Of a stretch of 64,000 nucleotides of DNA, positions 203-28,420 are shown in pieces. The position numbers and the translations under genes are program-made. Under the pieces are notes generated by a model. That model saw only the letters and a program-made list of their open reading frames with translations, had not been told where the DNA came from and ran no database searches. Position 1 is the first letter of the stretch, and each line of letters begins with the position of its first letter. The DNA comes from Perna viridis (lineage: Eukaryota): contig CM074524.1 of assembly GCA_037379345.1 (NCBI GenBank), forward strand, positions 11,524,885 to 11,588,884. Reading direction: 5' to 3'.

Positions 203-289
203 GTTGATTGTACTGTAAGCAGTACCCTTTGCAGTACTCTTGAGGTCAGAGGTTATCCAACATTGCTCTTCTTTAAAGATGGACAAAAG
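203..289 (+). CDS. TXNDC5: TXNDC5-like PDI, internal exon A (gene starts upstream of the window)
   Basis: AG at 201-202, GT at 290, 87 nt. Encodes VDCTVSSTLCSTLEVRGYPTLLFFKDGQK, the VDCT..C..VRGYPTL part of a thioredoxin domain. Confidence 0.92.
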
Positions 290-669
290 GTTAGTACGAT
301 AGTCAGTCTCCTGTATAGAGGTAACAAAGCATTTACGCAACTGCCATATTAAATACTAAACCCCACCTCTTTATGTAAATTGGTACAGGATTAAGGGAGG
401 AGCATTTCCAAGCATTGTTTTATATTTTTTTCTCTTAAACCGGTATATATAGTACTGTCCATACAGTTTTGTTACAATGTACTACACATTCATTTAAAAA
501 ATGTATTATTCAAGAATACAAGTTAGAACTTTTCTATTTCTACTTTACTAATATCAGATGAAAGTTATCGACACTTGTATTAATGCACTTAGAAATTTCA
601 TAATTAGAAAACAAAGAAAAATACTTGATTGGTTGTGTAATTAGTGCCAGTAGATTTTTTGTCAATGTA

Positions 670-876
670 CTGTGAAGCGAGAAATTTTCCCAGCATTTTT
701 TTCTCATGATTTTGGTAATCTATCTACAATTGAGCAGTTTTAAATGCATGATCTTTTTTATAATTATTTTATAATGTTCTTTAAAAAAAATTAACTACAG
801 CTTTATTTTCACATTACAGCTCTTACTGCAAAAATAGTGAAGATGAAAACTGCAGCAAAAAATTCACAGTTTACAG
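670..876. mobile_element. TA-flanked MITE with tactgt...acagta termini (similar element at ~34360-34565)
   Basis: ta|ctgtgaagcgagaaatttt ... aaaattcacagtttacag|ta. Confidence 0.55.
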
Positions 877-910
877 TATAAGAAATTGTTCAATACCTTT
901 TTCACTCTAG

Positions 911-1039
911 GTGGACAAGTATGCTGGAGCTAGAGATCTAGAAGTTTTCAAGACATATGTCAACAAGATGATCAATAGAGAGGATAAGAACGAAGATGAG
1001 GAAGGAAAAGTTCCAGAGAAAGCTGCTTCAGAGATCAAG
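911..1039 (+). CDS. TXNDC5: TXNDC5-like exon B (end of Trx domain plus acidic linker)
   Basis: ctctag|GTG...AAG|gtcagg, 129 nt, in frame with exon A. Encodes VDKYAGARDLEVFKTYVNKMINREDKNEDEEGKVPEKAASEIK. Confidence 0.9.
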
Positions 1040-2697: not shown

Positions 2698-2824
2698 GTG
2701 TGGACATTGCAAAAGATTGGCGCCAACATGGGATGATTTAGCCAAGAAGTACAGTGATGAGAAAGATGTAAAAATAGCTAAAGTTGATTGTACAGAACAG
2801 AAAGAAATTTGCTCAGAGAACAAG
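2698..2824 (+). CDS. TXNDC5: TXNDC5-like exon D (127-nt class, WCGHC active site)
   Basis: ttctag|G TGT GGA CAT TGC...AAG|gtaaa. Encodes (W)[42 protein letters not shown]. Confidence 0.95.
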
Positions 2825-3419: not shown

Positions 3420-3752
3420 GGATGTAGACCTGAGGTAAGAGACACAACTCTTTCAAATCATTGGAACGTTTGTATTTAATATTTTACATCAATCTCATGT
3501 AAGCATCAAAGTAACTTGGATTGATTTCATTCTGTTCCAAATGAAAGCTTGATACGCTTTGATGAAATTGAATATGATACAAACACAACCCTGATTTCAA
3601 GATTTTACATCAATCTCATGTAAACATCAAAGTAACTTGGATTGATTTCATTCTGTTTTAAATGAAAGCTTGATAGGCTTTGATGAAATTGAGTATGATA
3701 CAAACGCATCCCTGATTTCAAGAGTAATGTCCCTTACACTAGGTCTACCTCC
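3420..3752. mobile_element. MITE family A copy with internal ~120-bp tandem duplication
   Basis: Same TIRs; 3481-3601 is repeated at 3602-3721. Confidence 0.88.
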
Positions 3753-4120: not shown

Positions 4121-4267
4121 GTTAGAGGTTATCCAACCTTGTTCATCTTTAAAGATGGTGAGAAGAAAGACGAGTATAATGGTGGAAGAGATATTGGAAG
4201 TCTCAGCATGTATGTCGATAAATTTACTGGTGGTAGTAGTGAGTCTGGAGATAGTGCCGATACTAAG
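4121..4267 (+). CDS. TXNDC5: TXNDC5-like exon E (VRGYPT class plus linker)
   Basis: gatag|GTT...AAG|gtatgt, 147 nt. Encodes [49 protein letters not shown]. Confidence 0.93.
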
Positions 4268-4380
4268 GTATGTATAATATTAACCCTTACTTCATGCATG
4301 TAAAACAATCTGATTTCTTTCAGAGAAGAATCCATGGAGCTGCTACAGATAGCAAAATTTTTCCACGCCTATCAATAACT

Positions 4381-4725
4381 CCCATTTAAGCCACTCATTG
4401 TTTCTTCTCCATCTCCAATTTAAGCCCCCCCCCCTTGTTTCTTATCCATCACCAATTTAAGCCCCTCTTTGTTTCTTATCTTTCTCCAATTTAAGCCCCT
4501 TCTTGTTTCTTATCCATCTCCAATTTAAGCCCTCCTTGTTTCTTATCCATCTCCAATTTAAGCCCCTCCTTGTTTCTTATCCATCTCCAATTTAAGCCTC
4601 TCCTTGATTTTATCCATCTCCCGTTTAAGCCTCTCCTTGTTTCTTATTCACCTCCAATTTAAGCCCCTCCTTGTCTCTTATCCATTGCCAATTTAAGCCT
4701 CTCCTTGTTTTTATCCAACTCCCAT
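4381..4725. repeat. ~35-bp minisatellite, about 10 units
   Basis: Unit ccaatttaagcccctccttgtttcttatccatct. Confidence 0.93.
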
Positions 4726-5090
4726 TATCTGTTTTACTATTAGTTCTTTTTCATATTAACGGAATGCAAGCTATTTTGGCATGTCTTTCTAAGGGACATT
4801 ACCCACCAATGTATGACAACCTGGTTGGAGGTCTCATTGGGGAAAGGAAGATCTGTAAACACTATTCTTTGATTCTAAAACTATTTGCACTAGGTCAGTA
4901 CCTCAATGGTTTGAAGTAATTTATTTTAAAGTATCCCAATGCTTACTGCAGTCCAAATGAATGAAATTTTTGAGTTTGAAGTCTACTGCTGTCCAGTGCT
5001 CCAATCAGACAGTAAACCACTGTGTCAGGTTGGAGAGTTACTTCTCTTTGCTAAAAATTTTTGAAAAAGAAGTCTAAGTCAGGATTATGA

Positions 5091-5707: not shown

Positions 5708-5790
5708 GATCTTGTAGTAGATTTAAATGCAGAGAACTTTGAAGGAGCCATTGAAACTGGAGTCACTTTTGTCAAGTTTTTTGCTCCATG
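5708..5790 (+). CDS. TXNDC5: TXNDC5-like exon F (83-nt class)
   Basis: tttcag|GAT...CCATG|gtaagt. Encodes DLVVDLNAENFEGAIETGVTFVKFFAP(W). Confidence 0.93.
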
Positions 5791-6739: not shown

Positions 6740-6866
6740 GTGTGGTCACTGTAAAAGATTAGCCCCCACTTGGCAAGATCTTGCCAAGCAGTATGAAGAT
6801 ATTCAAAGTGTAAAAATAGCCAAGGTAGATTGTACTCAGCATAAAGAATTGTGCCAACAATACAAG
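6740..6866 (+). CDS. TXNDC5: TXNDC5-like exon G (127-nt class, WCGHC active site)
   Basis: ttttag|G TGT GGT CAC TGT...AAG|gtaaga. Encodes (W)[42 protein letters not shown]; overlaps ORF 6714..6917. Confidence 0.95.
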
Positions 6867-7193
6867 GTAAGACTGACTAGGGTTACTTTAATTTTCTTTT
6901 GTTTTCTGTGGGTTTGATATGCTAAACACCGAACGGTACCCTTGTTTGAGATTTGTTCTGTTTTGTTGATTTTTTTATGGAGTTATGCCCCTTTATCTTG
7001 CAAAAAATTCTGTAACCAATATTAAAACTTTGAGATATTGAACTGATGTTTGGTATGCAGGGTTATATCAATGTGTTTCATACTTAGATTGAGTTCTGTT
7101 CCAATTCATTAACTTTGGAGTGATGCCCCTGATGACTTTAGAAAAATTATACTGCAGGTATGGGCATTCAGTGAACTTTATTTTTGTTTGCAG

Positions 7194-7331
7194 GTAAGAG
7201 GCTATCCAACGCTAATGCTGTTTAAAAATGGTGAGCAGAAATCAGATTATAATGGAGGAAGAGATCTTACTGGCCTCAGTTCATTCTTAGATACATTTGT
7301 TTTCACTGGAGATATGAAAGATGAACTTTGA
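7194..7331 (+). CDS. TXNDC5: TXNDC5-like terminal exon H ending in KDEL
   Basis: tttgcag|GTA AGA...CTT TGA. Encodes VRGYPTLMLFKNGEQKSDYNGGRDLTGLSSFLDTFVFTGDMKDEL*, with an ER-retention signal. Confidence 0.95.
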   Translation, partial: VRGYPTLMLFKNGEQKSDYNGGRDLTGLSSFLDTFVFTGDMKDEL

Positions 7332-8263
7332 TAAGGAACATAATCTAGATAAATATTAATCAATTTTTTTAAACTTTATATGTGAAAAATACTCCTTGAA
7401 AAAGGGAGATAATCTTAATAATACACCTGAGATATAAAAAGCTCATCTGTGAACTTAAAAACAGGGAGAATTCAGAGAAATACAAATTTATTGTTAGCAA
7501 GAAAGATAAACAGCAATCAGGGGAGACAATCTAATAAATGACTACTTATGCAACTTAGTTTCAGAGGATGTCTTGAAACCTTTTTTTTTAAATGTGAGAA
7601 TTTTTTTTTTTTTTTTTGGGGGGGGGGGGTGTTGGGGGACATATTGCTTATCTTATTTTTGGACTTTCTTTGTTTCTCTGTTCCCTGGGTCATGAGGCTG
7701 CTTGTCCTTTTTTCCCTAATTTTCAAACTTCTTTTGAAAGATGGATAATTTAATGGTTTTATTATATCTTTAGGTACATGTAATAGAAGTAGTTTGACTT
7801 ATCATGTAGTTACTTATGTTGGAAACCTATTTTTGATCTTGTGTTGTTTTTTTTTTTTTTGTGGGAATTCCATTTTTAAGATCTCTTTTTTCATTGTGGG
7901 ATATATATACTTACGAGTTAAGGGGCTTTTTTTTATTTTTCAATTTGCAGGTTTATTTTCATTTTGTTTTGCATTTGCATGGGGATTTTTGTACATTGAT
8001 CGTAAATTCCAATGTTATCAAATGACCAGTCTTAAGAATCAGGCAGTTTGACCAACTGTCAACAAATGTTAAAAAAAGCATGGAGTGTTTTATATTGAAA
8101 CTGGTACAAACGGATATACATAAATTCTACTTAAGCTTCATCAGTTACATCATGTTAACAAACCACTCAAAACAGACATATAGGAATTTGTTCTTAAAGG
8201 TGCTGCACAGTGGAAAGCATCTACAGCAACAGCTGTGAACTATTATTTATAAAAAAAAATTAA

Positions 8264-8474
8264 GGAGGTAGACCTATGGTTAGGGACACAACTCTTACAA
8301 ATCATTGGAACCTTTATATTCAGCATTTTACATCAAACTTGTGTAGGCATTAAAGTAACTTGGACTGATTTCATTCTATTTCAAATGAAAGCTTGAAAGG
8401 CTTAGGTGAAATTGAATGATCCAAACATATCACTGATTTTACTGAGTTATATCCCTTACCTAAGGGGGTCCTCC
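8264..8474. mobile_element. MITE family A copy
   Basis: ttaa|ggaggtagacctatgg...ggtcctcc|ttaa; internal sequence is the reverse complement of 13189-13400. Confidence 0.88.
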
Positions 8475-8862
8475 TTAAACACCAATCAGTAAGAAAATCA
8501 ATCCTATGCCTGATTCTTGAAAAGACTTGTGTGAAGATGATTTTTTTTTTAAATCATTGCTTAATACTCTTTATACTTGTCTTGTTGATGAGAGTCTTCG
8601 TTTCTTTTTGTTGTAGGAAAAATAATGTGTTATTTAAATTTTTTTTTATATATTATGCCCATCATATGAAGTTTCGTTTAATTTTTTGAATTATTTATAT
8701 TTTATCTGTTTTTTCTTACTGATGTATGATTAAGAATCTAATATTATGACATTGATGATGACTTTGCAATGCAATATACATGCAAATTATGTTAATATAG
8801 ATCATGTATTACATTTGATGACCAAAATTGGTTATTTTTGAAAATTTACTCTCAAGATTTGC

Positions 8863-8960
8863 CATGCTACATGACTATTTTTCACATACCGGGTATACAT
8901 GCTACATGACTATTTTCCACATACCGGGTATACATGCTACATGACTATTTTCCACATACA
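8863..8960. repeat. 35-bp tandem repeat, about 2.7 units
   Basis: Unit catgctacatgactattttccacataccgggtata. Confidence 0.9.
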
Positions 8961-10222
8961 TTCATATATATTGGCCCTGGTTCATTCTTCACATTTGGCC
9001 ATTTAACATATATGAAAACGCCCATTTTACACTGTTATCTGAAATTTGACCATGTATAAATTAATATTACCTATTTACATATCAGGCAATATTGCTATAT
9101 TACACATGTACTGTATGATTTATATGTTTAATGTATGTTAGATATTATAGGCCATACTACATGAACTATATTAAAATTAAGTATTTATTGAAGGGTTTAT
9201 CCCTACTTAATTCACCATTTCATTCATTTCTTTTTATTGTGTGTGCTGGAGTGATTGTTTTTAAGTTATTATGAAAAAGCACTATGTATTATTTGTTTGG
9301 AAGAAGTCAATCAAAGTACTTAGGTACTGCTAACTCGGAAACCAATTCAGAGTTAGGGAATCAAACATACTAGTAATCAAGTAAAATAGACGAACATTTA
9401 GATGAAAAAGCATATACTGGTAGAAATAAGATATCATGATGTTCATGACAGAATTTTTTGTCACTAAAATTTTATTTCTCTATGGAAGAAAAGTGCAAGT
9501 CAGTGGTCCAAATTTACTTCCAAATGTGGAAAGTCCAGAAATTTTTACAAGTATCAAATGAATAGTCCATTTGAAGTAAAACTTAAGTCCTCAATCAATT
9601 ATCAGTAAATACAGTCAAAGGTCCGAGACCTTTGTATGTGAAACTTCAGATGAATGGTGTCAGAAATTTAGGGTCACGGACCTGAGACCTCCACTACTTT
9701 GAACCCATATGTAAATATGATATTTTAGACCACAGTTAACAAAATCTTCTGGGTATTTGATATTTTTTAAAAGAATTTTTTTGACTGGAGAATATGAAAT
9801 ATGTAGGGACAAAACATTTTCATGAGAATTGCATCTTTACTAGTAAAAATTTAAGGAGAATGGTTGTTAATTTATATTTATTTACCAAATTATTTTTTAA
9901 AATTTTCTTTGTGTATGGTTTTGTCAGATTAAATTTGAACAATGTAAGTTAGTTGTACATGAATATCCCAAAATACCAATTAATAAATATTGTAAATTTG
10001 GGTATGCTGTACAAGTGTTTCAAGGAGTAACCTTTCATCGGCAGTTCTGAGCTTCCAGAAGAAAAGTTTATAGCCTTAGCATAGTTGAATCAGAGGGATG
10101 CCCATAGCCTATAGCATTTAAAGTGTATGTTATATAAAATAATAAATATTGAGTGTGTGTATTTGTATTTAGCCTCAGATAGCTATGGTCAGTACATCTC
10201 TTTTTCCTGTAATGCTTTTAAA

Positions 10223-10606
10223 GTGTAAGTCTTTGTAAGAATCAGACAAAAAGGGGCATAAAAGAAATTTGTTTGCCTTAAATCCACAGATCTGACAAAA
10301 TTTCGCTCAAGGATGATTTCTCTTTTTTAAAGCACCACTATTTGATTTCTGCACCACTGCAATTGTTTAGAAATTTTTTAATAGACTGTTAGAAAAAGGG
10401 AGGTTTTTGTCAGAGTTACCTGCCCTTAAAACGCTCATTGTCAGTGCATTTCAATGAAATCATAACTCAATTTACCAAAATGATATGGAAAATCTTGTCC
10501 TTTTCCTTAATTATGATGGTGCAAGAAGTCAAATTACACTTTCAAAATAGTGTTTTTTTTTCATACCATGTTTCAGCCACTGCCTGATTCTTACAGAGAC
10601 TGACAC
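10223..10606. mobile_element. MITE, taagaatcaggca family
   Basis: gtgtaagtctttgtaagaatcagaca ... tgcctgattcttacagagactgacac|ttaa. Confidence 0.8.
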
Positions 10607-10638
10607 TTAATCAACCCAATCACTAACTGTTTTTTCTA

Positions 10639-11172
10639 CAGTGAAACCTGTTAAAACCAAACTCTTTTTGCCTGTACAGAATATAGTAGGTTAAGACAGG
10701 TGTTCAGTTTACACAAGCAAATATTTTTCATGTGAAATTCATGTTAATTGAGCTTCACATGAAATTCATGTGAAATTCGTGTTAATCGAGCTTCACATGA
10801 AATTCATGTGAAATTCATATGAAGTTAACATGATTTTCATGTGAAATTCATATGAAATTAACATTATTTTCATGTGAAATTCACTAAATACTAATTTCAT
10901 GTGAAATTCACTAAACACTAATTTCATGTGAACATTTTGTGTGAATTTCACATGAAGGCTCCATTCACCCGAACTTCACGTGAACTCTGTCACTTAGTTT
11001 ATTTGCTTAATTCAGGTGAAATCATGTGAAATTCGTGTGAAAATCATGTGAAATAACTTCGCCTGTGTACCAAGTTTTAAAATATAAGCTAATATGTAGG
11101 ATATTCAAAAAGCAGCTGGTTCAGACAGGTTGTTTTTGTTAAATCGGGGTTCAGTTTATGCAGGTTTCATTG
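10639..11172. mobile_element. Tc1/mariner-like MITE containing a nested TA-flanked MITE (10712-11067)
   Basis: Outer element ta|cagtgaaacctg...caggtttcattg. Inner element ta|cacaagcaaa...ttcgcctgtg|ta is filled with ttcatgtgaa/ttcacatgaa units. A short copy of the inner element lies at 12617-12737. Confidence 0.75.
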
Positions 11173-11224
11173 TTCAAAATCTGTCTATAGTGTCTTCTTT
11201 TTCTTTGAAAATACATAATTTTAA

Positions 11225-11953
11225 AGCTGCATTAGCCGTCATTTTCGTAAAAAAAATTCTGTTGAAATATTCCTTTGTTCTTCTAAATTGCACTTTTCCT
11301 ATGTAATTTCATTCGATATCCACAAATAAAATGTGTTAAATACATGAAATAGGTGCCTATATATTTATTGTCTTGCAAGACAAAAACTGACGTAGATAAA
11401 TTCGTATGCATGTGACTTCTGGTGACCTTAATCCACGCATGTGCTGTAAGGGTCGCTTTTTTAAAAACAAATCTGATAAGCGAAAGTGATTCAAATCAAA
11501 GGCAAGGAAGACCGATGGACCCGAGCCATAAAAGAAAAAAAAAGTTCGAATATAATGCAAGAATCCTTTTGAAATTTACGTATTGTGATATATTGAGGCA
11601 CATATACGGTCAGTAACTGTCATTATTTATTTGAAAACTAATCAAGAAGTAGATGAAACGAAATGTAAACAAGACATGTGCTTACCTGTGTATCCGTTAT
11701 TGTAATTTTTTTCAAGGTTAAAGTATTTTTAACCCGGGTTAATGTCCTGTCGGCAATCTTCGGAAGTAATGGCGAAAAATAATAAGATCTTAGCTATCGA
11801 TCTTCTTTGATTGAAAAAAGAAAAACGTTTTTCCAATATTCTGTAGGTGTTATTGACATTTATTGCTTCTATTGCAGTATTACAAACTTATTTCATTTTA
11901 TCAGCATAATTCAGTAGAATCAAAACTGAACAAATTTGGCAGCTAATGCAGCT
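11225..11953. mobile_element. Non-autonomous TTAA-flanked DNA transposon (Kolobok-like)
   Basis: ttaa|agctgcattagc ... gctaatgcagct|ttaa: perfect 12-bp TIR plus TSD, 729 bp, no ORF. Confidence 0.8.
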
Positions 11954-13188
11954 TTAAAGGAATTTTGCAGTTGTGCTATAATCTGATTTAACATATACTG
12001 GTGTAGTTAAGCATTGCATTCAAATTACTTTAATAATTTTCAAGGCTGCTAATTTTCACTAATATTGTCAAATGAAATACAGTATATATCATGGGTATTA
12101 TTTTTACAGTTTTTTTTTAAGTTGGTGTTTCTTAAGGAAAAAAATCAATTCTAATATGACGCTATTCAAAACCTTCAAAACCACAGCCATGGTAAATAAG
12201 TGATAACACATGATAAACATTTGGTGCATTATATTGGTTGCATGTACTAAAAACGTGAAAAAATAAGTCATATTAGAATCAAAATAAATTACGAAAACTC
12301 CATTTTATCATTGTTTTAACTTGGACTGGCCATTAATGTCATTATTTAACCTCTTGCTATCATTTGGGATAAAACAATGGGACATAAATGGTCAGTTCAT
12401 GGTAAAACAATGATAAAGTGAAGTTTCCATGAGTTACTTCTGAATTTCACTTGTTCTATTTTCCATACTTAATTGTCAATTGCTAAAATAGCAAAAAATA
12501 ATTCATCATAAAAATCCATCTGTTTACAGGGCAACTTTTTGTGGCATAAATCTATAATATAACTTCTATTTGAAATCCAGGTCATCTTTATTGCTGTAAT
12601 GTGAAATCTAGATGTACACAGGCAAATGATGTTTGTGTGAAATTAATGTGAACCTAGCTTCATGTGAATTTCATGGGACTTTATAACATCATGTGCAAAT
12701 TTCACAGGAAAATCATGTGGAAATAATTTTGCCTGTGTATGGAACAAATTTATTTAAAATGTTCGTTGGTTCCAATAATATCATATTTTTTGTTAATTCA
12801 TTTATGGTCCGGGTTAAAAAGCTGTATAAGATTTAATTTGATTCTTTATTTTTTTCTTTAAATAAATTTAGTAATAAAATCTAGTTTTTGTTTGTAATGG
12901 AACTTTAATGTTTGTTCTTGTTTTTAAAGAATTTTTTATAATCTTTGTAAGAATTTAGAAAATTCAGGTAGTCTGAAATTTACCTGTACATTTAAAAAAA
13001 AACATTGGTCTGCATGTATGTTTTCTCTTCAAGACGTCTTCTCCGTTCTGAATGACATCATCATCAATAGAGACTTTGAGACTTACCCTGGTAGGCAAAC
13101 AGAATATATATATATATATAATCTGAATTTACAAACTAGGGGACCTGAAACATTTGTTGTTGTTTTACTGTTTACTAGGTAATTTTAA

Positions 13189-13400
13189 GGAGATAGACCT
13201 AGGGTAAGGGACATAACTCTTGAAATCTGTGATGTGTTTGTATCATATTAAATTTCATTAAAGCCTTTCAAGCATTTTTTTGAAACCGAATGAAATTAGT
13301 ACAAGTTACTTTAATGCTTTCATGAAATTGATGTAAAATGGTGAATTCAAATGTTCCAATGATTTGTTAGAGTTGTGTCCCTTACCCTAGGTCTACCTCC
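13189..13400. mobile_element. MITE family A, TTAA-flanked (Kolobok-like termini)
   Basis: ttaa|ggagatagacctagggtaagggacataactctt ... agagttgtgtcccttaccctaggtctacctcc|ttaa; TIR about 33 bp. Confidence 0.9.
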
Positions 13401-14388
13401 TTAAAGTTTTGATAGAACATCCTGTTTTTGTCTCGTCAAATTTTGAAATAAATGAGAAACCTAAAATACTGAAACATTCAGAAACAGAAGTAGAAATACT
13501 GTTAGCATACCCATAAAATGCTATCTAATTATACATCTTAAATTCTTAAGTTTGAATTTCTCCTCTGACAATTATCTTCCCTATGCATATCTACGAATAT
13601 CAAAGACTGTGTCGAAATTTGGGATACCAGCAGTGCTGTATACCTAGTCTCAAGTAAAAGACAAAGATGAGCCAAGAGATGTTTTAGTTTATAGGTATCT
13701 TAATCTTTGCAAGCAGAGACCAAAAGAGGGGGGGTCCAGAGATTTTGAAAAGAAGGGCTTTAGACTATTATTTGCCTATTTTTGCAAAAACATATTTTGC
13801 ACTAAATCAACACAAATATTTCACAGAAGTGGGAAACTCCGACCCATGGACTCCCTCCGCCACGTTGGCTCCACTATCGGAGATAGATATTTATTTTATC
13901 TTAGAACTTTTCTACAAAGACTGTGTACTCTTTATAGCCACTTTCTAAGTCCATTGGTTGAATAATATCTTTTTTTTTGTATAACAATAATTAAAAATTA
14001 TTATATTTGTCTTTAATCAATGATTATGGCACTTCACAATGTTCGATTGTGATTAACAGCAGTTACATGTACATGTAGCTTCTAGGTATAAGCCAACGTA
14101 ATAAGCTTGATTACTGCAAGCAAACTAAGCTGAATTCATGTCTTGTCTCTTATTAAAAACCATATACATAGAGTAGAAATAATTTAAATTCGGGCTATGA
14201 AAGAGGCAGAATTTAATAAGCTTGATTTTGACTGTACGGTCAATATTAATTCAACTTCATCATCATGTGTAGGGTAAGATACACTGACTACATGGGAGAT
14301 CTATTTTAATGGCGGTATTTTTTTTTTTGCATGGTGTGGTCAAACGGTCAGCAAACACGATACTTTGTCTTTCCTATCCGAAACTTTA

Positions 14389-14775
14389 AGTAGCACTCCA
14401 GCTAAGAATCATGCAAAATGTGATACATGGTTGGAAAGCCTACATATTTTTATTTTTGATATTTTGTTTAAAATGCTTTAGTAAACAAAAAATAGCATTT
14501 GGTTTTTCATATAACCCGTGTTCATAGGAGATAAAAATTGTATAGAATGCACTGTAGAATTCAAAATTAAGGGAGATAACTCTGTAAATGACACTCAAAT
14601 ACAATAGAATCTATTGGATTTTCAATGTTGATTATCTCCTAAGCGCAGGCAGATTTGAATGAATAATTGCACATTTCATAGTTTAGACCCATAAAACAAC
14701 TTAATTACAAAAATAAAAATATGTAGCCTTTTTGGGGTGTATCACATTTTTCAGATTTAGCATGATTCTTACTTA
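14389..14775. mobile_element. MITE-like repeat with taagaatc subterminal motif (inverted copy at ~58500-58745)
   Basis: actccagctaagaatcatgcaaaatgtgatac...gtatcacatttt...gcatgattctta. The sequence ggttggaaagcctacata recurs inverted at ~58690-58706. Confidence 0.65.
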
Positions 14776-16075
14776 AAATCGGTTCCTAAAATTTTGAATT
14801 CTGTACCGTACATTATAGGGTTGGAACCACAAATTTTGAAAGATTAGTCCAAGCTATTATCTGCTCACATTTTGCCCCAATTTTTAACGAAATTATCAAA
14901 CTTTTTCAACAAAGATCAACCCAAAATGATTTGCCACTGGGTCGCCTGGTCCCTGGTTGAACAAGTATAAAATAGAGACAATTTTTTTCTTTTACGAATT
15001 AGACTACCATAAATCAGAGTAAGGAGGTTTGAGGAAAATTCTTCATTATTATCGATTTGATGTCAGATATGGAACTTTACCAAGTTTACTATACATTAGA
15101 TTCTGGTAGTTTGACAGGTCTTGAAAACAAACTCCTGTGTTACAGTTAAAATAGCCAAATAAATACACGATGTCACGATTTGCCCAGAAGAATGCCTTGA
15201 GAGAAGGTAAGAAATAAAATATTTGCTGTGCATGCAATGCTTTGCTTTGCATGATGTTGGACTTATTGAATCGATTTATGAAGTACCAAGTAAAAGTGTA
15301 ATGTGTGTATCTATTCACACTCATATATGGAAGCCCGTCCGAGATATTATTTCATATGACATTCATCCTTGATTCCATCTAATAGCACGCACTGTTTTCG
15401 GTCAAACATATATGATATATTTGAACAATTTCAGGGCCTATGTTTGCATAAACTTGATATACCCCATCAAACAATTACTTAATAAGTCAGTTTGTAAAGT
15501 CCTTTTCAGAACAGCAGGTATACTTTGTCAAGTAAATTACCTTTGCTCGAACTATACTATCTTTTAGATGAGGCGTCCATGCTGTTACTTAAATCGTGCG
15601 ATTATATGGCAGTAAATATATGCCATGGAATTATTACCCCGCAAACCTAATTTTGTAAGAGTTCCATACTAAAGAAATGATAATTTATGATGTCATTTTG
15701 ACACCTAAATATTGGAACAGCTCGAAAATCTTCTTTATCTGGGTTTAGTTGTCGTTATAACACAAAAATATGCCAATAAGTCTTTTAAGTGAGTAGGCTA
15801 TAATTTTCACTCAAAAAACAGGGCCACACACTGGTTTAAACGAATATCCCTTTAGCACATGTCCATGTAAAAGAACGTATCCTTTGATACCACAGACAAT
15901 AAATTTAAAGGACACGAATATTTTTCACTCGTGCACATCAACTGCAGTTAACACGAAAGGGTATCCCTCTTTCCTCTGAACAACACCTAGTTGTAAATGC
16001 AAAGCTCGTGTGGAATTAAGAAAAGTATTTTTGGCTATAGATGTCCTTTTAGATATTTTGTGATTTATTTTTTAG

Positions 16076-16243
16076 GTCAACGGATATCCATCCTTTATGT
16101 TAATCAAAGATGGAGAAGTTCGGGAAGGTTTCTATGGAAACCGAGAGTTGAAAGATTTTACCAGATTTATCCAGAAATTTTACAAATTTGAATACGTTGA
16201 AAATGCAAAGAAGGCTTTAATAATGGAAGAAACAGACAGTCAG
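16076..16243 (+). CDS. Thioredoxin exon I (VRGYPT class plus linker); alternative 3' end of TXNDC5 or part of a paralog
   Basis: ttttag|GTC...CAG|gtaaat, 168 nt, phase 0/0. Encodes VNGYPSFMLIKDGEVREGFYGNRELKDFTRFIQKFYKFEYVENAKKALIMEETDSQ. Confidence 0.85.
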
Positions 16244-16808
16244 GTAAATATAAATGTCCTGATTTCAAACTGGTCTCAAAAGAATTCGAATCTTTATAAG
16301 AAAAAAAACCAAAACAATAGACTCGTTCTATATGCGAGGCGGAAAGCCCAAAATGAGATAAATTCAATCCAAAACACCATAGGGTACGTGGTCTTGGATC
16401 CGTATATAGATTAAAAGTTTTTTTTTTTGTTTTACTTTTGTGTTCTTCTATCGTTTTCGTTTTCGTTTTTTTTTCAAATGATCATGCGAGTTAAAATTTT
16501 GGCGGAAATCCTGTGCTCTTAAATGAAACAGCTAAAACAGGGCTTACCGACAACAAGAGCCACATAGTTTCATCGGTAATCGTATCATTTTAGTTTTCTT
16601 ATTTCTTCGCTACTATCGCAGTTGAAAAGTAATCTGTTTTACCCAAATAATCAAGAACCTCTCCGTATTCATATCGATTCTACTATCGAGGAGTATTTCT
16701 TACCTTTTCAAGCTTGAACCCTTCAAACTTTTTTTTGTTTTGTGTGATGAAGGTCACGATCGATCTTAAATGACTCAGTATTCAAATACTTTGATTATCT
16801 TATTGCAG

Positions 16809-16891
16809 TCGAAAGTAATAAAACTGACTGAAGACAATTTCAAGTCCACAGTCGCTGAAGACTTTACGTTTGTGAAATTCTTCTGGCCTAC
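16809..16891 (+). CDS. Thioredoxin exon J (83-nt class)
   Basis: ttgcag|TCG...CCTAC|gtaagt, exactly 83 nt like exons C and F. Encodes SKVIKLTEDNFKSTVAEDFTFVKFFWP(T). Confidence 0.9.
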
Positions 16892-17361
16892 GTAAGTAAA
16901 TTCAATAACAGATGGACTTAATATGGACTGTAATAAAATTCGACTTTAGAAGTAACACGCTTTCTCATTGGATAAAACATTTCGACTATCAAATAGACAA
17001 ACTTAACGGACGTACATTCTGGGCATAATATGTGATCTGCCCCAAACGGTGACCTTCCGCGACCATTGGGACTATTTCGTTTGACGATTTGGAAAATAAC
17101 ATCGGAAATGACATTATCATCGTTTTTATATAATTAGTTATCATTTTGTACTAAATCAAATTAAAATAGCCGCGAAATTATTTTGTCGTTCTTCATCGAC
17201 TAAAATATAACCAGTCATTTCTTTTTTCAATTCAGAAATTTGCTTCTTTCTGGTTGTACTGTTTGCCAGGTTGAAGAAATACACTTTATGTATATCTTTG
17301 AATTTTTATTTTACTTAAAGGGTTTCAATGAAATTTGATTTATATTAAATGAAGGTACATA

Positions 17362-17676
17362 CACTCCATGAAACGTTCACGTTTCCCATTTTAGTGTTCA
17401 TGCATCGTTTATCGTGCGTTTACACATCGGTTTGCGTTCGTTTATTCAACTGTTATTTTTATATTATTTGCTTTTATTAATTTATATATGTTCATTTATT
17501 AAATTTTCTATTTTTTCTTTCGTCATTATTTGCTAATAATATTATTAGTCATCGTTCGTCTATCGTGCGTTTAAACGCACGCTGTGAGCGTTCATTTCGT
17601 TTATCGTGCGTTTGGTGAGCGTTTAGCGAGTGTTAAGATATCGTGCGTGCGGGAAACCTTGACTTCTCAAGGAGTG
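17362..17676. mobile_element. TA-flanked MITE in the intron between exons J and K
   Basis: ta|cactccatgaaacgttcacgtttccc ... gggaaaccttgacttctcaaggagtg|ta; internal cgtttatcgtgcgttt repeats. Confidence 0.75.
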
Positions 17677-17827
17677 TATAATGAGGAAAAATAGTATGCA
17701 TGCTGCAGATTGTTTTGCCTAATAAAAGTTGCAACTGATCCCCAAAGTTGTTGCAATGTGAGGTCACATTGTAATGCTTTCTATCAAAATAAATTCATAT
17801 ATATCTTCTTTGTTTAAAAAAAAACAG

Positions 17828-17954
17828 ATGCGGGCCATGCAAATCGTTTGCCCCAACCTGGCAAGAAATGGCAAAGAAAAATTCCTATGAAAAAGTACTG
17901 AAATTTGCTGACGTGAATTGTCACATCAGTGAAGATCTATGCGATGAACACAAG
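17828..17954 (+). CDS. Thioredoxin exon K (127-nt class, TCGPC active site)
   Basis: aacag|A TGC GGG CCA TGC...AAG|gtaagg, exactly 127 nt like exons D and G. Encodes (T)CGPCKSFAPTWQEMAKKNSYEKVLKFADVNCHISEDLCDEHK. Confidence 0.9.
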
Positions 17955-18537
17955 GTAAGGGACGAGCTTAACATCTTTTATAAGTACTTGTTGAGATGAG
18001 GTCCACAAGGAAGATAATTCGTCCCTTCGAAAGAAAGAATGTGGTACACTGCGGACCTATCATTGTCCTTCTAATTCATGTATGGCAGAATGTGCCCCTA
18101 AAAGTCGGCTTAATGTATAAAAACACGTTCATGACGATGGACCGGGCCAGAGCACATATACTAAATGTGATATGTACCAAAGCTGTACCTTTTATTGAGG
18201 AGTGTTTCTTCAATTTTCATTGAACGAAATATTTTTTTAATATCAACAACTGCACCTGGTACCTCACAACTCACGGTCGTGGTTGCACAAAGCTTAATTT
18301 AATCTAAATGGACGATGTTACAGTAAACTCATATAGAATTCAACAAGGTGTTAGTCTTTATACTTAAAGACTTGTGGGCATTTAAAAGAAACACCGTATT
18401 ATGGAACTTTCAACATTATTGATGGGGAATTGACCTCAAATTCGCAATAGTTTTCAATTGTACAGTATTACACTTTACTCTGCACAATTTCATTATTATG
18501 TTAATTATAAAACAAATGTAACAATTATTGCTTACAG

Positions 18538-18672
18538 ATAGACGGATACCCAACGATTAGAATGTTTAAGAAAGGAAAAATCATTGTAGACTTTAATGGA
18601 AAGCGAACAATTGAAGCCTTGAATGCATTTATCGAGAAGTACATACCTGGAACTAAACACGAGGAACTGTAG
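18538..18672 (+). CDS. Thioredoxin terminal exon L ending in HEEL
   Basis: ttacag|ATA...CTG TAG. Encodes IDGYPTIRMFKKGKIIVDFNGKRTIEALNAFIEKYIPGTKHEEL*, a KDEL-type retention variant. Confidence 0.9.
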   Translation: MDGYPTIRMFKKGKIIVDFNGKRTIEALNAFIEKYIPGTKHEEL

Positions 18673-18673
18673 A

Positions 18674-18679
18674 AATAAA
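18674..18679 (+). terminator. Candidate polyadenylation signal after the HEEL exon
   Basis: AATAAA directly after the stop codon. The hexamer is common by chance in AT-rich DNA. Confidence 0.4.
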
Positions 18680-20306
18680 AGAAATGTACATGTATATCTG
18701 GTTATCCTTATATGATGCCTTTAAATGAACTCGTTCTGTAGGACGTAACTGAATCGTGCTCGATTTTAAGTGGCAGATCTTATCAAAATCAGGCGAGAGG
18801 TGGTTTATGAATACCAAAAACCCCTAAAAGTAATTTTTTTTCTTATTCAGAAATACTAACAGATCACATACATACACATGTATAGTCAATCTAAGTTTGT
18901 CATTTGGTTACTTCTAAAACAATATTTAGACTGTGTATGAAATAGGCAATTCGCAAGAGTTATTGCTCTTGCTTTGGTTGATTTTAGTGGGAGATGAATG
19001 CGTGATTTTCTCCAAATACAAATTTGATTATAGAAAGTTTAATGTTTAAATACATAAAATAGAGCATAAGTAGATAAAAAAAAGTAATTTTTATTCGGTG
19101 GGTTTTTTCTACACTATAAGTCACCTATACCAAAGACAGTGTCTGAACTTTATATGGACTGGTACTTAAAGGCGTCAATCGTTGAATTAACGGCCGTCCA
19201 TGTATACGAGTTGAGATCGGATTTGTCCCTTCAAATCAAGACTAACAGACATATTCTCAAATATAATGGCGTTATCTTCATTCTAACGCTTCTGCGAAAA
19301 TCGGAAAATAGTAACGCATTGATAATTGATATGGGGAGCCTGAAAACTCTACAATTGTATATTGCTGAAACGTAATACACCTTCGGAATTTTGAAATTCA
19401 GAAAATTTTAATTTCGGCTTTTATATGTCCAAAAAATGCTTCTGTACAAACCAGACTAAACGTATTGAGAAATAGCAATGTAGTTGAATAAGTATAGAAC
19501 ACTGAATATATCCTTGAACAACGGGGCCGGAACAGATTACAACTTCAGCCGGACGTTTTAGTGTATAATAATAAATAAATAACAAAAAGTTAATAAATTA
19601 TTGTCAAATCAATACCGGACATATTTGTGAATGAAGTGAACCCGTAACTGTAGAAATATCGTCGCATCAACAACCGAGAGATACACACATGCGTAAGTGT
19701 TATAATTAACATTTCAAACTAACTAACAGAACACGAATCCGAGTGAATATTGTAGGGATGCTAATCACAAAGCAGTACGTATGTCGATGCAACTCGACGC
19801 CAAAAAAAAAAACAAACAAACAAAAAACACGATGATTGACGTTGGAGAGCTTGGAGAAACTTGTCATAACGAGTTTATAAATAAACTAAATGGGACGGGT
19901 TCAATCATTGAAGAATCATATAATCAAGTCTTTATAGTTCAACCGTGGTAAAATCAACGTTAACAATATTGATACTTAACGATGATATCCGATGATTTAT
20001 TTTACGCAATTTTGAGTGATTTCTAATGTGGTATGTTACCTCTTTATTTGTATCATATTTTCTTTGTATATATATCAAATTGTGTGGTTTATTGAGGTTT
20101 GATAGCTAGTCCAGTGAGTAGTACTATTTAAAAAAAAACAAAAAACAAAAAAAAAAACAAAAAAAAAAAAAACGATAAGCTCTTTAAAATACCAGACAAT
20201 TTTTGTTCCATTTAGAGCACTGACCACGTGTTCATACATGATTTTCTATAATGTCATGCACAACAAATATGTTCCGACTCAGTCAATATATTATTTCAGG
20301 CTTGAA

Positions 20307-26239: not shown

Positions 26240-28420
26240 ATAACAAAATGGACGCCGAAGTAGAGTTCAAGAAATTTTGAAAATTTTGTTAACAATTAAC
26301 CAATTGAATTGAACGAATTACCTAGTGGTCCAATCACTGAGGACGAAATAGTTAAAATTAAAAATATTAGAAATCTAAAAAATGGCAAAGCATTTGATGA
26401 TATCGTTAATGAATATTTAAAAAAAAACACTGTTTTGGAGCTAATACCTGTATACTTAAAGATTTTTAATTTAGTACTCGATACAGGTATTGTACCAGAA
26501 CTTTGGTCACAAGAAATTATTGTACCTATTTATAAGAACAATATAAGAATAAAGGTTTGGTATCGGACCCAAATAACAATAGAGGAATTACACTAAATTC
26601 ATGCTTAGGGAAAACCTTCTCATCCATTTTGAATGAAAGACTTACTAAGTCTTCTGATGAGATTGAGCTCTTACACGAATCACAGACTGGATTTCGAAAG
26701 GGTTATTCTACTGTTGACAACATTTTTGTACTACACTCCCTTTAAGCTTTAAGGTATAACTATATTGCACATTTGTTGATTTTAAAAAAAGCATTTGACA
26801 CAGTTTGGAGAGATGGTCTGTGGCTTAAACTTCAAGAATCCAATGTAACAGGGAAAATATTTTCAGTTATTTTCAATATGGATCAGAATATTAAGTGTTG
26901 TATTAGGCATCAAGGTAATTTCTCTGCATTTTTTTAACTGTAGAGTTGGTGTAAGACAAGGAGGAACCTTGTCGCCTTTTTGTTCTCAATTTTATTTAAT
27001 GATCTAGAAATCTTAATGCAAGACAATAAAGTACAAATCTAGATTTGATAGAAAGTTCATGCTCAGAAATGTTTGATGTATATGTCAAAATATTTGTGAT
27101 GCTTTATGTAGATGATACCATTATAATGTCAGAAACAAAGGAAGCTATGCAAAAAGCATTGGATGTGTTTGCTAATTACTGTAAAGAATGGAAGTTACAA
27201 GTTAATACTGAAAAGACAAAAAGTTATTGTCTTCAGTAAAATAAAGCGTAAACAACATTTTCAATTCCAAATATATAACAAAAATATAGAAATAGTAGAG
27301 TCGTATACATATCTAGGCACGGTTTTCAATTACAACGGCAGTTTCACTATTACAAGAAAGCGTCTAATAGATCAAGCCCAAAAAGCTCTTTTTGCTCTCT
27401 ATAGGAAACTAAGAAACATTCACCTGCCAATAGATTTACAGTTGAAATTATTTGATACTTTTGATATCACCGATACTTTTATATTCCTCTGAGGTCTGGG
27501 GTTTTGAAAATAAGCAAAACATTGAAAAGGTGCATCTTAAATTTATATCTTAATCTTAAAAATATCCTTAAGCAGAGAAGCAGCACTCCGAATTTTATGG
27601 TTTATGGCGAGTTGGGTAGACTTCCACTTGTTAAAGTAAGAATTATTAGCCTTTGAGCAAGAACTGTGGAAGAAGAAGAAAAACTGTCCAATAAAATGCT
27701 TCGGCTTATGTTAAAATTGCATGACAATAATCCAATCAAATTTAGGTGGAATAGCTATCATGTTAAATATATCTTGGATGATACGGACACGTTAAAGTAA
27801 ATATTAACTGGCTTAAGGTCGCAGTTAAACAGACATTATATGATCAATTCTATCAATCTTGGTTTTTACAAATTGACAACATATCTAGTGGTGAATTCTA
27901 TTCCGATTTTAAACATGAATTCAGAATTGAACTATATCAGATAGTCCCCAGCAGAACGTATTCATTTGACAAAATTAAGATGTCCTAACTTAAAACTACC
28001 AATAGAAACTGGAAGGTAGTCTGGAGTCCCACGGAGTCAAAGAATATGTAATCTTTGTAAACAAGTGGTGGGAGATGAAGTTCACATATTCTTCCAGTAA
28101 AATAATCCAACGGTTATGTATTTACGATCTCGTTACATCCCAGATGACTACTCAAAGCAACCGAATATGAGTAACTTTGGGAGGTTATTGTCTATCTGTA
28201 ATGTTCAATTATTCAAAAGAGTGTGTGCTTTATTACGAAAAATTGCTAATATCATATGGAAGTGAATAGGTCAAAATATAAATGTTAATCTGTATGTATT
28301 CACATATTTAATGATATTGTCTGTGTATTTGTCTTATTTATATGTATGTGCATTTGTTTTTTTTTGTTGTCCTCGTGTACACCTAATGTGTCTGAGACTA
28401 TCAATAAATCTTGTCTTAAA
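26240..28420 (+). mobile_element. 5'-truncated decayed non-LTR retrotransposon, CR1/L2 group (RT plus C-terminal Cys/His region)
   Basis: Fragmented frames give PNNNRGITLNSCLGK, QTGFRKGYSTVDNIF, FVDFKKAFDTVWRDGLWLKL, GVRQGG.LSP, LYVDD and KLPIETGR*...RICNLC...GDEVH. There are many stops and frameshifts. The 3' end is AATAAA plus tcttgtctt at about 28404-28418. Confidence 0.92.

What the first reader, a model, noticed from the sequence alone, without database searches (positions are those of the whole stretch)
16076..18672. Headless four-exon thioredoxin module 8.7 kb behind the KDEL exon: candidate alternative 3' end that adds a domain and swaps KDEL for HEEL
Seen: exons I-L are stop-free, have canonical splice sites and match the upstream exon classes exactly (83 and 127 nt, same phases). 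The module begins mid-domain with a VRGYPT-class exon (VNGYPSF...). I found no start, signal-peptide or intact 83/127-nt exon between 7331 and 16076. Exon I is phase 0, so exon G (6866) or exon D (2824) can splice to it in frame instead of H or E. Inference: one locus makes two ER PDIs, a KDEL form and a longer HEEL form. The longer form would have a chimeric CGHC domain with a different cis-Pro loop half (GYPS vs GYPT) plus an extra divergent Trx domain. Strong divergence with open frames argues for purifying selection rather than decay.
Basis: partly seen in the sequence, partly recalled or inferred. Interest (0 to 1): 0.8.

Follow-up and report, generated by a model that had tools for sequence, protein, structure and literature searches.

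The report
Expressed extra thioredoxin module behind PDI gene
Four exons lying 8.7 kb behind a mussel-like TXNDC5/ERp46 protein-folding gene are real, transcribed and correctly spliced. They most likely give that gene an optional second tail (one more thioredoxin domain, HEEL instead of KDEL), but the splice that would join them to the gene was not seen.

Summary
Exons I (16076-16243), J (16809-16891), K (17828-17954) and L (18538-18672) are open and have AG/GT borders. They repeat the 83/127-nt exon classes and phases of the upstream four-domain CGHC PDI gene. Contigs of four RNA-like runs from four studies join I-J-K-L exactly at those borders.

Codon-position identity (2nd > 1st > 3rd) shows long coding constraint, exon I included. 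No other N-terminal half of a thioredoxin domain lies between 7332 and 16075 or nearby on the chromosome.

The acceptor of exon I is used. One contig carries 177 more letters 5' of it, and these do not lie in 12901-16073. Another contig carries exactly 28 letters. That is the length expected at a 31-mer fork if the upstream exon also joins an exon starting with GT, as E and H do. I could not see the letters, so the donor (G, D or an unknown exon) is not shown.

In Mytilus the orthologous KEEL exon is internal and a further domain follows it, so C-terminal domain accretion has happened in this gene family.

Best reading: a distal alternative last-exon block of the PDI gene (about 0.55). Main rival: a separate transcript with its own 5' exon (about 0.3).

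The parts
16076..16243 (+). Exon I. It encodes the C-terminal third of a thioredoxin fold (VNGYPSF.., cis-Pro loop, conserved Arg) plus a 21-residue linker. Phase 0 at both ends.
   Evidence: Sequence and translation. PF00085 positions 70-103. Acceptor used and donor joined to J in four runs. Codon-position identity to E/H is 0.54-0.57, 0.66-0.69 and 0.37-0.40.
16809..16891 (+). Exon J, 83-nt class. It encodes beta1-alpha1-beta2 up to FVKFFWPT.
17828..17954 (+). Exon K, 127-nt class. It carries the CGPC active site and the conserved VNC..x6..C cysteine pair.
   Evidence: Second codon positions are 81% identical to D/G, third positions 35-40%.
18538..18672 (+). Exon L, the terminal exon: IDGYPT cis-Pro loop, conserved Arg, KHEEL and the stop codon.
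18674..18679 (+). AATAAA poly(A) signal just after the stop. Contigs end at 18666-18778.
7332..16075 (+). 8.7 kb between the KDEL exon and exon I. It holds no thioredoxin exon and no ORF above 91 aa. It contains high-copy repeats at about 13100-13500 and 14300-14900. Patchy low-depth RNA contigs lie at 15672-16035.
6740..6866 (+). Exon G (127 nt, CGHC), the favoured candidate donor. It ends ..TACAAG|gtaaga in phase 0.
   Evidence: The donor role is inferred, not seen.
2698..2824 (+). Exon D (127 nt, CGHC), the second candidate donor. It ends ..AACAAG|gtaaaa in phase 0.
   Evidence: The donor role is inferred, not seen.
7194..7331 (+). Exon H, the proximal terminal exon (VRGYPT..FVFTGDMKDEL and stop). 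Its AATAAA is at 7533. It begins GTAAGA, so the G-H junction re-forms AAG|GTAAGA.

Best explanation
Exons I-L are a distal alternative last-exon block of the upstream four-domain TXNDC5/ERp46-like PDI gene. When the proximal KDEL exon H and its poly(A) site are skipped, a 127-nt-class exon splices in phase 0 to exon I. Exon G at 6866 is the likeliest donor and D at 2824 is possible. Exon I completes that CGHC domain with a different cis-Pro half (GYPS) and supplies a linker. J-K-L then add a fast-evolved thioredoxin domain with a CGPC site and an HEEL retrieval signal. Shown: the exons, their splicing to each other, their expression and their coding constraint. Also shown: the acceptor of exon I is used, with exon sequence from more than 3.1 kb upstream. 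Inferred: the identity of the donor, ER location, and function as a more thioredoxin-like (reducing) extra domain.
For: (1) Contigs of four runs from four studies join I-J-K-L at the predicted borders. They align only from 16074 (AG) and then run on unlike the genome, so exon I is an internal exon. (2) The X2 contig has 177 further letters 5' of 16074 that lie nowhere in 12901-16073. (3) The X3 contig, the deepest at 13.6, has exactly 28 letters before 16076. At a 31-mer fork a branch keeps 30 letters minus the letters shared by the two branches. I starts GTC, E starts GTT and H starts GTA, so two letters are shared and 28 is expected if the upstream exon also joins E or H. Three of four contigs end within 28 letters of the junction. 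(4) Exon I kept the codon-position pattern 2nd > 1st > 3rd against E/H, as strongly as exon L, while third positions are near random (random identity is 0.28) and introns share nothing. A third of a domain kept as coding needs the other two thirds. The only such exons within megabases are those of the upstream gene, on the same strand and in the same phase. (5) HEEL fits the ER retrieval pattern, and the VxC-x6-C cysteine pair of TXNDC5 domains is kept in K. This suggests a lumenal protein that needs the upstream signal peptide. No credible signal-peptide exon turned up in 7332-16070; the one candidate (8080-8199) is weakly hydrophobic. (6) In Mytilus galloprovincialis the orthologous H-type exon is internal (..FVFTGDMKEEL then PSEIVEEFN|gt) and is followed by a further 83/127/135 domain in the same protein. 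A tree with JKL sister to that Mytilus domain is not rejected (lnL +0.95, p-AU 0.53).
Against: No read or contig was seen to join G or D to I, because the loose-end letters at 16074 were not among the rows shown. The X2 contig passes 179 letters upstream at the same low depth (6.6). A de Bruijn contig should break 28 letters in if the upstream exon were shared with an expressed KDEL form. So in X2 either the KDEL form is absent or rarer, or the upstream exon is unique. RNA contigs in the presumed intron cluster in the last 400 nt before exon I (15672-16035) rather than along it. That could mark a nearby start site. No protein containing exon I joined to upstream domains is in the protein collections, though these seem not to hold this species' transcripts. 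The fork argument rests on one contig and on my understanding of how Logan contigs end.
Confidence: 0.55

Rival explanations
1. Separate transcription unit. A partial tandem duplicate of the gene's 3' end acquired its own promoter and one or more 5' exons (at least 179 nt, ending ..AG), lying in 7332-12900 or further away. The product would be one of two things. It could be a secreted or ER protein with an orphan third of a domain before a full CGPC domain. Or, if translation starts at the well-placed ATG near the end of exon I (ataATGg, 'MEETDSQ..'), it could be a roughly 121-residue single-domain CGPC thioredoxin without a signal peptide.
For: The X2 contig extends 179 letters 5' of exon I without the break expected at a shared exon, and at the same low depth as the rest. 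Contigs of the other three runs stop 3, 9 and 28 letters in, as they might near a short transcript's 5' end. Low-depth RNA contigs lie just upstream of exon I (15672-16035) but hardly further up. CGPC is the classical thioredoxin site.
Against: Exon I's Trx-frame coding constraint is unexplained if its first 49 codons are untranslated or form an orphan fragment. There is no N-terminal half-domain exon and no credible signal-peptide exon in 7332-16075. Retention of HEEL and of the cysteine pair points to the ER. The exact 28-letter overhang in X3 would be coincidence.
Confidence: 0.3
2. Transcribed relic. I-L is a decaying partial duplicate that is spliced at low level as noise (read-through or cryptic splicing) and makes no functional protein.
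For: Depth is low (4-14) in all runs laid. The branch of JKL is very long (1.52 against a median of 0.3), and no close relative of exon I exists in 1.84 billion representatives. No such module lies within 10 kb downstream of the Mytilus gene.
Against: 513 nt stay open across four exons with all eight splice sites intact, although synonymous sites are saturated. The codon-position pattern is 2nd > 1st > 3rd in every exon. The catalytic CxxC, both cis-Pro loops, both conserved Arg residues and an ER-retrieval-type end are all kept. There are zero differences in about 2200 exon letters across four runs, against 3 in about 1235 flanking or intron letters. Seventeen RNA-like runs of seven studies hold it.
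Confidence: 0.08

Closest known systems
TXNDC5 / ERp46 (PDI family; human gene with 10 exons, three CXXC Trx domains and KDEL; PMC4284777)
   Same: Repeated a-type thioredoxin domains and an ER-retrieval tetrapeptide at the end. The upstream gene has the CGHC sites. The JKL domain falls in the clade of TXNDC5 last domains (94/90 support). The module uses the same exon classes and phases as its neighbour.
   Different: The human isoforms described differ at the N-terminus, not the C-terminus (PMC4284777). Here the gene has four CGHC domains. The module's site is FFWPTCGPC instead of F[YF]APWCGHC, and its end is HEEL. JKL is only 37-44% identical to any TXNDC5 domain, whereas the other mytilid last domains compared with d4 are 60-85% identical to it.
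Mytilus galloprovincialis TXNDC5-like protein (P0031, 517 aa; locus L006)
   Same: It is the ortholog of the upstream gene (70-79% identity per exon). It also carries an extra last-type domain 3' of the FVFTGDMK[DE]EL exon.
   Different: In Mytilus the old KEEL exon lost its stop and splices on constitutively, with the next exon 570 nt away. Here the KDEL exon keeps its stop and poly(A) signal. A second H/E-type exon (I) with a linker stands 8.7 kb downstream before the extra domain.
Alternative last exons (skipped terminal exon type) and recursive splicing
   Same: There is a proximal terminal exon with its own poly(A) signal (H, AATAAA at 7533) and a distal block with its own (L, AATAAA at 18674). 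Both are entered through strong acceptors in the same phase. The G-H junction re-forms AAG|GTAAGA.
   Different: Use of a common donor is not shown here, and recursive use of the re-formed site is untested. GTA AGA is simply one way to encode Val-Arg.

Membership tests
Thioredoxin fold (Pfam PF00085) | Match to the profile over the curated cut-off (23.5 bits) | tested here: met
   K scores 31.6 bits (positions 30-68) and L 24.0 bits (70-103). I scores 17 bits (70-103), a fragment below the cut-off on its own. The search was exon by exon.
Thioredoxin fold (Pfam PF00085) | CxxC active site, cis-Pro loop and conserved Arg | tested here: met
   CGPC in K; GYPT and GKR in L; GYPS and GNR in I. The Trp before the first Cys is replaced (WPTCGPC).
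TXNDC5/ERp46-type PDI | Several a-type domains with CGHC in one polypeptide | tested here: inconclusive
   This is true of the upstream gene (four CGHC sites). Whether I-L is part of that polypeptide depends on the unseen junction. The module's own site is CGPC.
TXNDC5/ERp46-type PDI | N-terminal signal peptide | tested here: not met
   The module has none of its own, and no credible candidate exon was found in 7332-16070. It would have to come from the upstream gene.
TXNDC5/ERp46-type PDI | C-terminal ER retrieval signal ([KRHQSA]-[DENQ]-E-L; pattern recalled from PROSITE, not checked here) | tested here: met
   The module ends HEEL and then stop.
Alternative last-exon gene | Two terminal exon blocks, each with its own poly(A) signal | tested here: met
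   AATAAA at 7533 after H and at 18674 after L. Contigs end at 18666-18778.
Alternative last-exon gene | Transcripts joining one shared upstream exon to either block | tested here: inconclusive
   The acceptor of I is used and at least 177 nt lie upstream. The 28-letter overhang fits a fork with E or H, but the letters were not seen and X2 does not break.
Recursive splicing | A 5' splice site regenerated at the exon-exon junction | tested here: met
   G+H gives TACAAG|GTAAGAGG; D+E gives only GTTAGA.
Recursive splicing | Use of the regenerated site (lariat or junction intermediates) | not testable with these tools
   This needs raw reads or lariat sequencing over 6866-16076.

The most novel reading that the evidence does not exclude
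The locus shows a multi-domain PDI in the middle of gaining a domain. An old partial duplicate of its own 3' end is used as an optional distal last-exon block. One gene would then make a KDEL form with four CGHC domains and a HEEL form with a chimeric CGHC domain plus a thioredoxin-like CGPC domain. Mytilus would show the fixed end state, with its former KEEL terminus fossilised inside a linker. The choice might run through the 5' splice site that the G-H junction re-creates.
Probability: 0.35. Interest if true: 0.6.

Novelty: new variant of a known kind. Interest (0 to 1): 0.4.

Why it matters
TXNDC5-type PDIs vary from 3 to 9 thioredoxin domains among invertebrates, but how domains are added is rarely seen. 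Here an expressed, selectively kept 1.3-domain module sits behind the stop codon of such a gene, and a sister genus has already built an extra last domain into the protein. If the junction is confirmed, this is a natural example of domain accretion through an alternative last-exon stage. It would also be a PDI whose isoforms differ in the chemistry of the last active site (CGHC against CGPC) and in the retrieval signal. If instead the module has its own promoter, it shows how a gene fragment becomes a new small thioredoxin gene. Either way the effect is local to mussel ER biology, and there is no wider open question that it settles.

Tried and rejected
- **Exon I peptide against 1.84 billion representatives.** The only close hit is P0001, a 105-aa prokaryote-style ORF that reads from the internal ATG of exon I into the intron. 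It sits on three Logan DNA contigs. No ortholog and no full-length protein turned up.
- **Word search with the 112-codon genomic ORF, region 1-56.** It found only P0001, so no transcript-derived fragment of 62-196 aa is held.
- **Word search with an alignment of P0005 plus exons I, J, K and L as separate rows, 282-896 aa.** It returned many TXNDC5 proteins but none from this species and none with an I-L-like tail. The collections seem to lack this species' RNA contigs.
- **Own-genome searches with I, K, PF00085 and P0021.** There is no second copy of the module, no stray half-domain exon and no P0021-type gene.
- **Nucleotide comparison of the module region with the upstream gene.** There is no intron similarity, so the duplication is not recent.
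- **Spliced-leader trans-splicing as the source of the short 5' overhangs.** I considered and dropped this, because the X2 overhang of 179 letters is too long.
- **P0014/P0021 (PDIA5-like by motif order, from memory).** They give the best match to the whole of exon I including its linker (22/50). No ortholog is in this genome, so I treat this as distant similarity.
- The joined spliced model (G or D + I + J + K + L) was not sent to any search or fold tool. Searches were exon by exon by reference, and structure prediction of the chimeric domain was therefore not done.

Full report
**What is there**

The window is AT-rich (32% G+C) eukaryotic DNA. By its best protein matches it comes from a mytilid-like bivalve. 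A Logan transcript protein, P0030, is 80-88% identical per exon. Mytilus galloprovincialis P0031 is 70-79% identical.

The first 7.3 kb hold the 3' part of a TXNDC5/ERp46-like PDI gene:
- A 203-289
- B 911-1039
- C 1758-1840 (83 nt)
- D 2698-2824 (127 nt, CGHC)
- E 4121-4267
- F 5708-5790 (83 nt)
- G 6740-6866 (127 nt, CGHC)
- H 7194-7331 (..FVFTGDMKDEL, then stop)

Two more CGHC domains lie in the 10 kb before the window (L005), so the gene encodes four catalytic domains.

**The observation**

- I 16076-16243 (168 nt)
- J 16809-16891 (83 nt)
- K 17828-17954 (127 nt)
- L 18538-18672

All are open with AG/GT borders and the same phases as C/D and F/G. I is an E/H-class exon (VNGYPSF.., then a 21-residue linker). 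J, K and L make a complete thioredoxin domain with FFWPTCGPC in place of F[YF]APWCGHC, and it ends KHEEL. Pfam PF00085 matches K, L and, as a fragment, I.

Three searches find no other 83- or 127-class exon between 7332 and 16075 or near the locus. They are tblastn with every exon peptide, a profile of 73 TXNDC5-type domains against all six-frame fragments, and a whole-genome PF00085 scan. The 8.7 kb hold only two ORFs of 70 aa or more (85 and 91 aa). They hold no plausible ATG-plus-signal-peptide exon ending ..AG|GT in phase 0.

**Expression**

Seventeen RNA-like runs of one organism, from seven studies, hold 12-22% of the sampled words of 16076-18900. That is about what the four exons plus a short 3' UTR amount to.

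Contigs of four of these runs (four studies) were laid on 12901-18900. They join 16243^16809, 16891^17828 and 17954^18538 with GT..AG ends and no other letters in the exons. Contigs end at 18666-18778, behind an AATAAA at 18674. The module is therefore transcribed, spliced as read and polyadenylated.

**What lies 5' of exon I**

All four contigs align only from 16074 (the AG) and then run on unlike the genome. So the acceptor is used, and the upstream exon ends in AG preceded by a letter other than T. Counted from 16076, the contigs carry these numbers of upstream letters:

| Run | Upstream letters |
|---|---|
| X1 | 3 |
| X6 | 9 |
| X3 | 28 |
| X2 | 179 |

None of these letters lie in 12901-16073, and no joint from that stretch to exon I was reported. 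The table of loose ends was cut before these rows, so I never saw the letters.

Two inferences pull in opposite directions.
- **For a shared upstream exon.** With 31-letter words, a branch at a fork keeps 30 letters minus those shared by the two branches. Exon I starts GTC, E starts GTT and H starts GTA. A contig of the I branch should therefore keep exactly 28 letters of an exon that also joins E or H. X3, the deepest contig, has exactly 28. Three of the four contigs stop within those 28 letters.
- **Against it.** X2 runs 179 letters on at an unchanged low depth of 6.6. It should not do so if the upstream exon were shared with an expressed KDEL form in that sample. Either that sample has little KDEL form, or the upstream exon is unique to this transcript.

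Low-depth unspliced contigs lie at 15672-16035 and in the three introns. They fit pre-mRNA, but their clustering just before exon I could also mean a nearby start site.

**Selection**

The module shares no intron similarity with the upstream gene. Identity by codon position:

| Comparison | 1st | 2nd | 3rd |
|---|---|---|---|
| K vs D/G | 0.50-0.60 | 0.81 | 0.35-0.40 |
| J vs C/F | 0.54-0.57 | 0.61-0.64 | 0.19-0.33 |
| L vs E/H | 0.57-0.63 | 0.60-0.63 | 0.26-0.40 |
| I vs E/H | 0.54-0.57 | 0.66-0.69 | 0.37-0.40 |

Random identity is 0.28. So the duplication is old and all four exons, exon I included, have been kept as coding sequence in this frame. Four runs show no difference in about 2200 exon letters, against three in about 1235 intron or flank letters. 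That is a weak hint in the same direction.

Exon I encodes only the last third of a thioredoxin fold. It has still kept the cis-Pro loop, the turn Gly and the conserved Arg. That makes sense only if it is translated behind the first two thirds of a domain. The sole source of those is the upstream gene. K also keeps the VxC-x6-C cysteine pair of TXNDC5 domains, and L keeps an ER-retrieval-type end. Both point to a lumenal protein, which needs the upstream signal peptide.

**Relatives**

No protein in the representative library or the word-indexed collection contains exon I. The one exception is P0001, a genomic ORF that reads into the intron. The collections seem to lack this species' transcripts.

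The Mytilus galloprovincialis locus (L006) is informative. There the H-type exon (26605-26766) reads ..FVFTGDMKEEL, continues with PSEIVEEFN and splices on to a further 83/127/135 domain that ends RKEEL. A former KEEL terminus is thus fossilised in a linker. Three-domain mytilid-like proteins (P0047, P0051) still end at that exon. C-terminal domain accretion has therefore happened in this gene family. No I-L-like module lies within 10 kb behind the Mytilus gene.

In a tree of 52 domains, JKL sits in the clade of last domains (94/90 support) on a branch five times the median length. An AU test does not reject JKL as sister of the extra Mytilus domain (lnL +0.95, p 0.53) or of FGH (p 0.21). JKL is 37-44% identical to every such domain.

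**Reading**

The best-supported account is a distal alternative last-exon block: G (or D) to I-J-K-L, skipping H and its poly(A) signal at 7533. G is favoured for two reasons. Skipping one terminal exon is the usual form of such a switch. And the Mytilus arrangement places the extra domain behind the FGH-type domain.

That could let H act as a recursive step, but it is untested, and GTA AGA is only one way to write Val-Arg.

I put this reading at about 0.55. A separate transcript with its own 5' exon gets about 0.3; its product might be a small CGPC thioredoxin starting at the ATG near the end of exon I. A transcribed relic gets under 0.1.

**Limits**

- The joined spliced model was not sent to any search or fold tool. 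Searches were exon by exon by reference.
- Structure prediction of the chimeric domain was left out for that reason.
- Domain translations were joined only inside scripts for the local tree.
- The fork argument depends on one contig and on how Logan contigs end.

**Comparison with what is known**

Human TXNDC5 has 10 exons, three CXXC domains and KDEL, and its described isoforms differ at the N-terminus (PMC4284777). I found no description of a C-terminal switch that adds a domain and changes the retrieval signal in this family, but I ran only one literature search.

Noticed in passing
L006:26605-26766 (Mytilus galloprovincialis, GCA_965363235.1 OZ263156.1): The ortholog of the KDEL exon is internal in Mytilus. 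It reads ..FVFTGDMKEEL and continues PSEIVEEFN|gt into a fourth domain, so a former ER-retrieval terminus is fossilised in a linker. Three-domain relatives (P0047, P0051) end ..MKEE[LI]RDEL at that exon.
   Followed up: partly
L005:5039-9851 and window 203-1039: The upstream PDI gene starts before the window and has four CGHC domains. The first two have a different exon layout: one exon fuses the 83-nt class with the start of the CGHC exon, and exon A joins VDCT..C to VRGYPT.
   Followed up: partly
window 13100-13500, 14300-14900 and 17300-17700: High-copy repeats with contig depths of 10^3-10^4 in all four RNA-like runs and many loose ends. Joints such as 13404>17481 link the copy before exon I to one inside intron J-K.
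   Followed up: no
window 16097-16414: The frame of exon I stays open for 56 more codons into the intron. This 105-aa read-through ORF is in the public protein collection as P0001, called on three Logan DNA contigs (SRR26215654-56). It is a prokaryote-style gene-call artefact.
   Followed up: yes
window 4379-4726: A 34-nt minisatellite with 10 copies (CTCCAATTTAAGCCCCTCCTTGTTTCTTATCCAT) in intron E-F. Further tandem arrays lie at 2054-2478 (118 nt, 3.6 copies) and 3474-3723 (121 nt, 2.1 copies).
   Followed up: no
window 10727-10932 and 12600-12720: Clusters of short 'CATGTGAAATTCA'-type repeats (periods 11-38 nt) occur at two places in the H-I interval.
   Followed up: no
P0014 residues 29-78 and P0021 residues 389-434: The best database match to the whole of exon I, linker included (22/50 identical, F..F..FE.VE tail), is in a different PDI-like protein. 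Its next domain also lacks the Trp before its CxxC (FVKFFTSGCPHC) and has VNC..C. There is no ortholog in this genome.
   Followed up: partly
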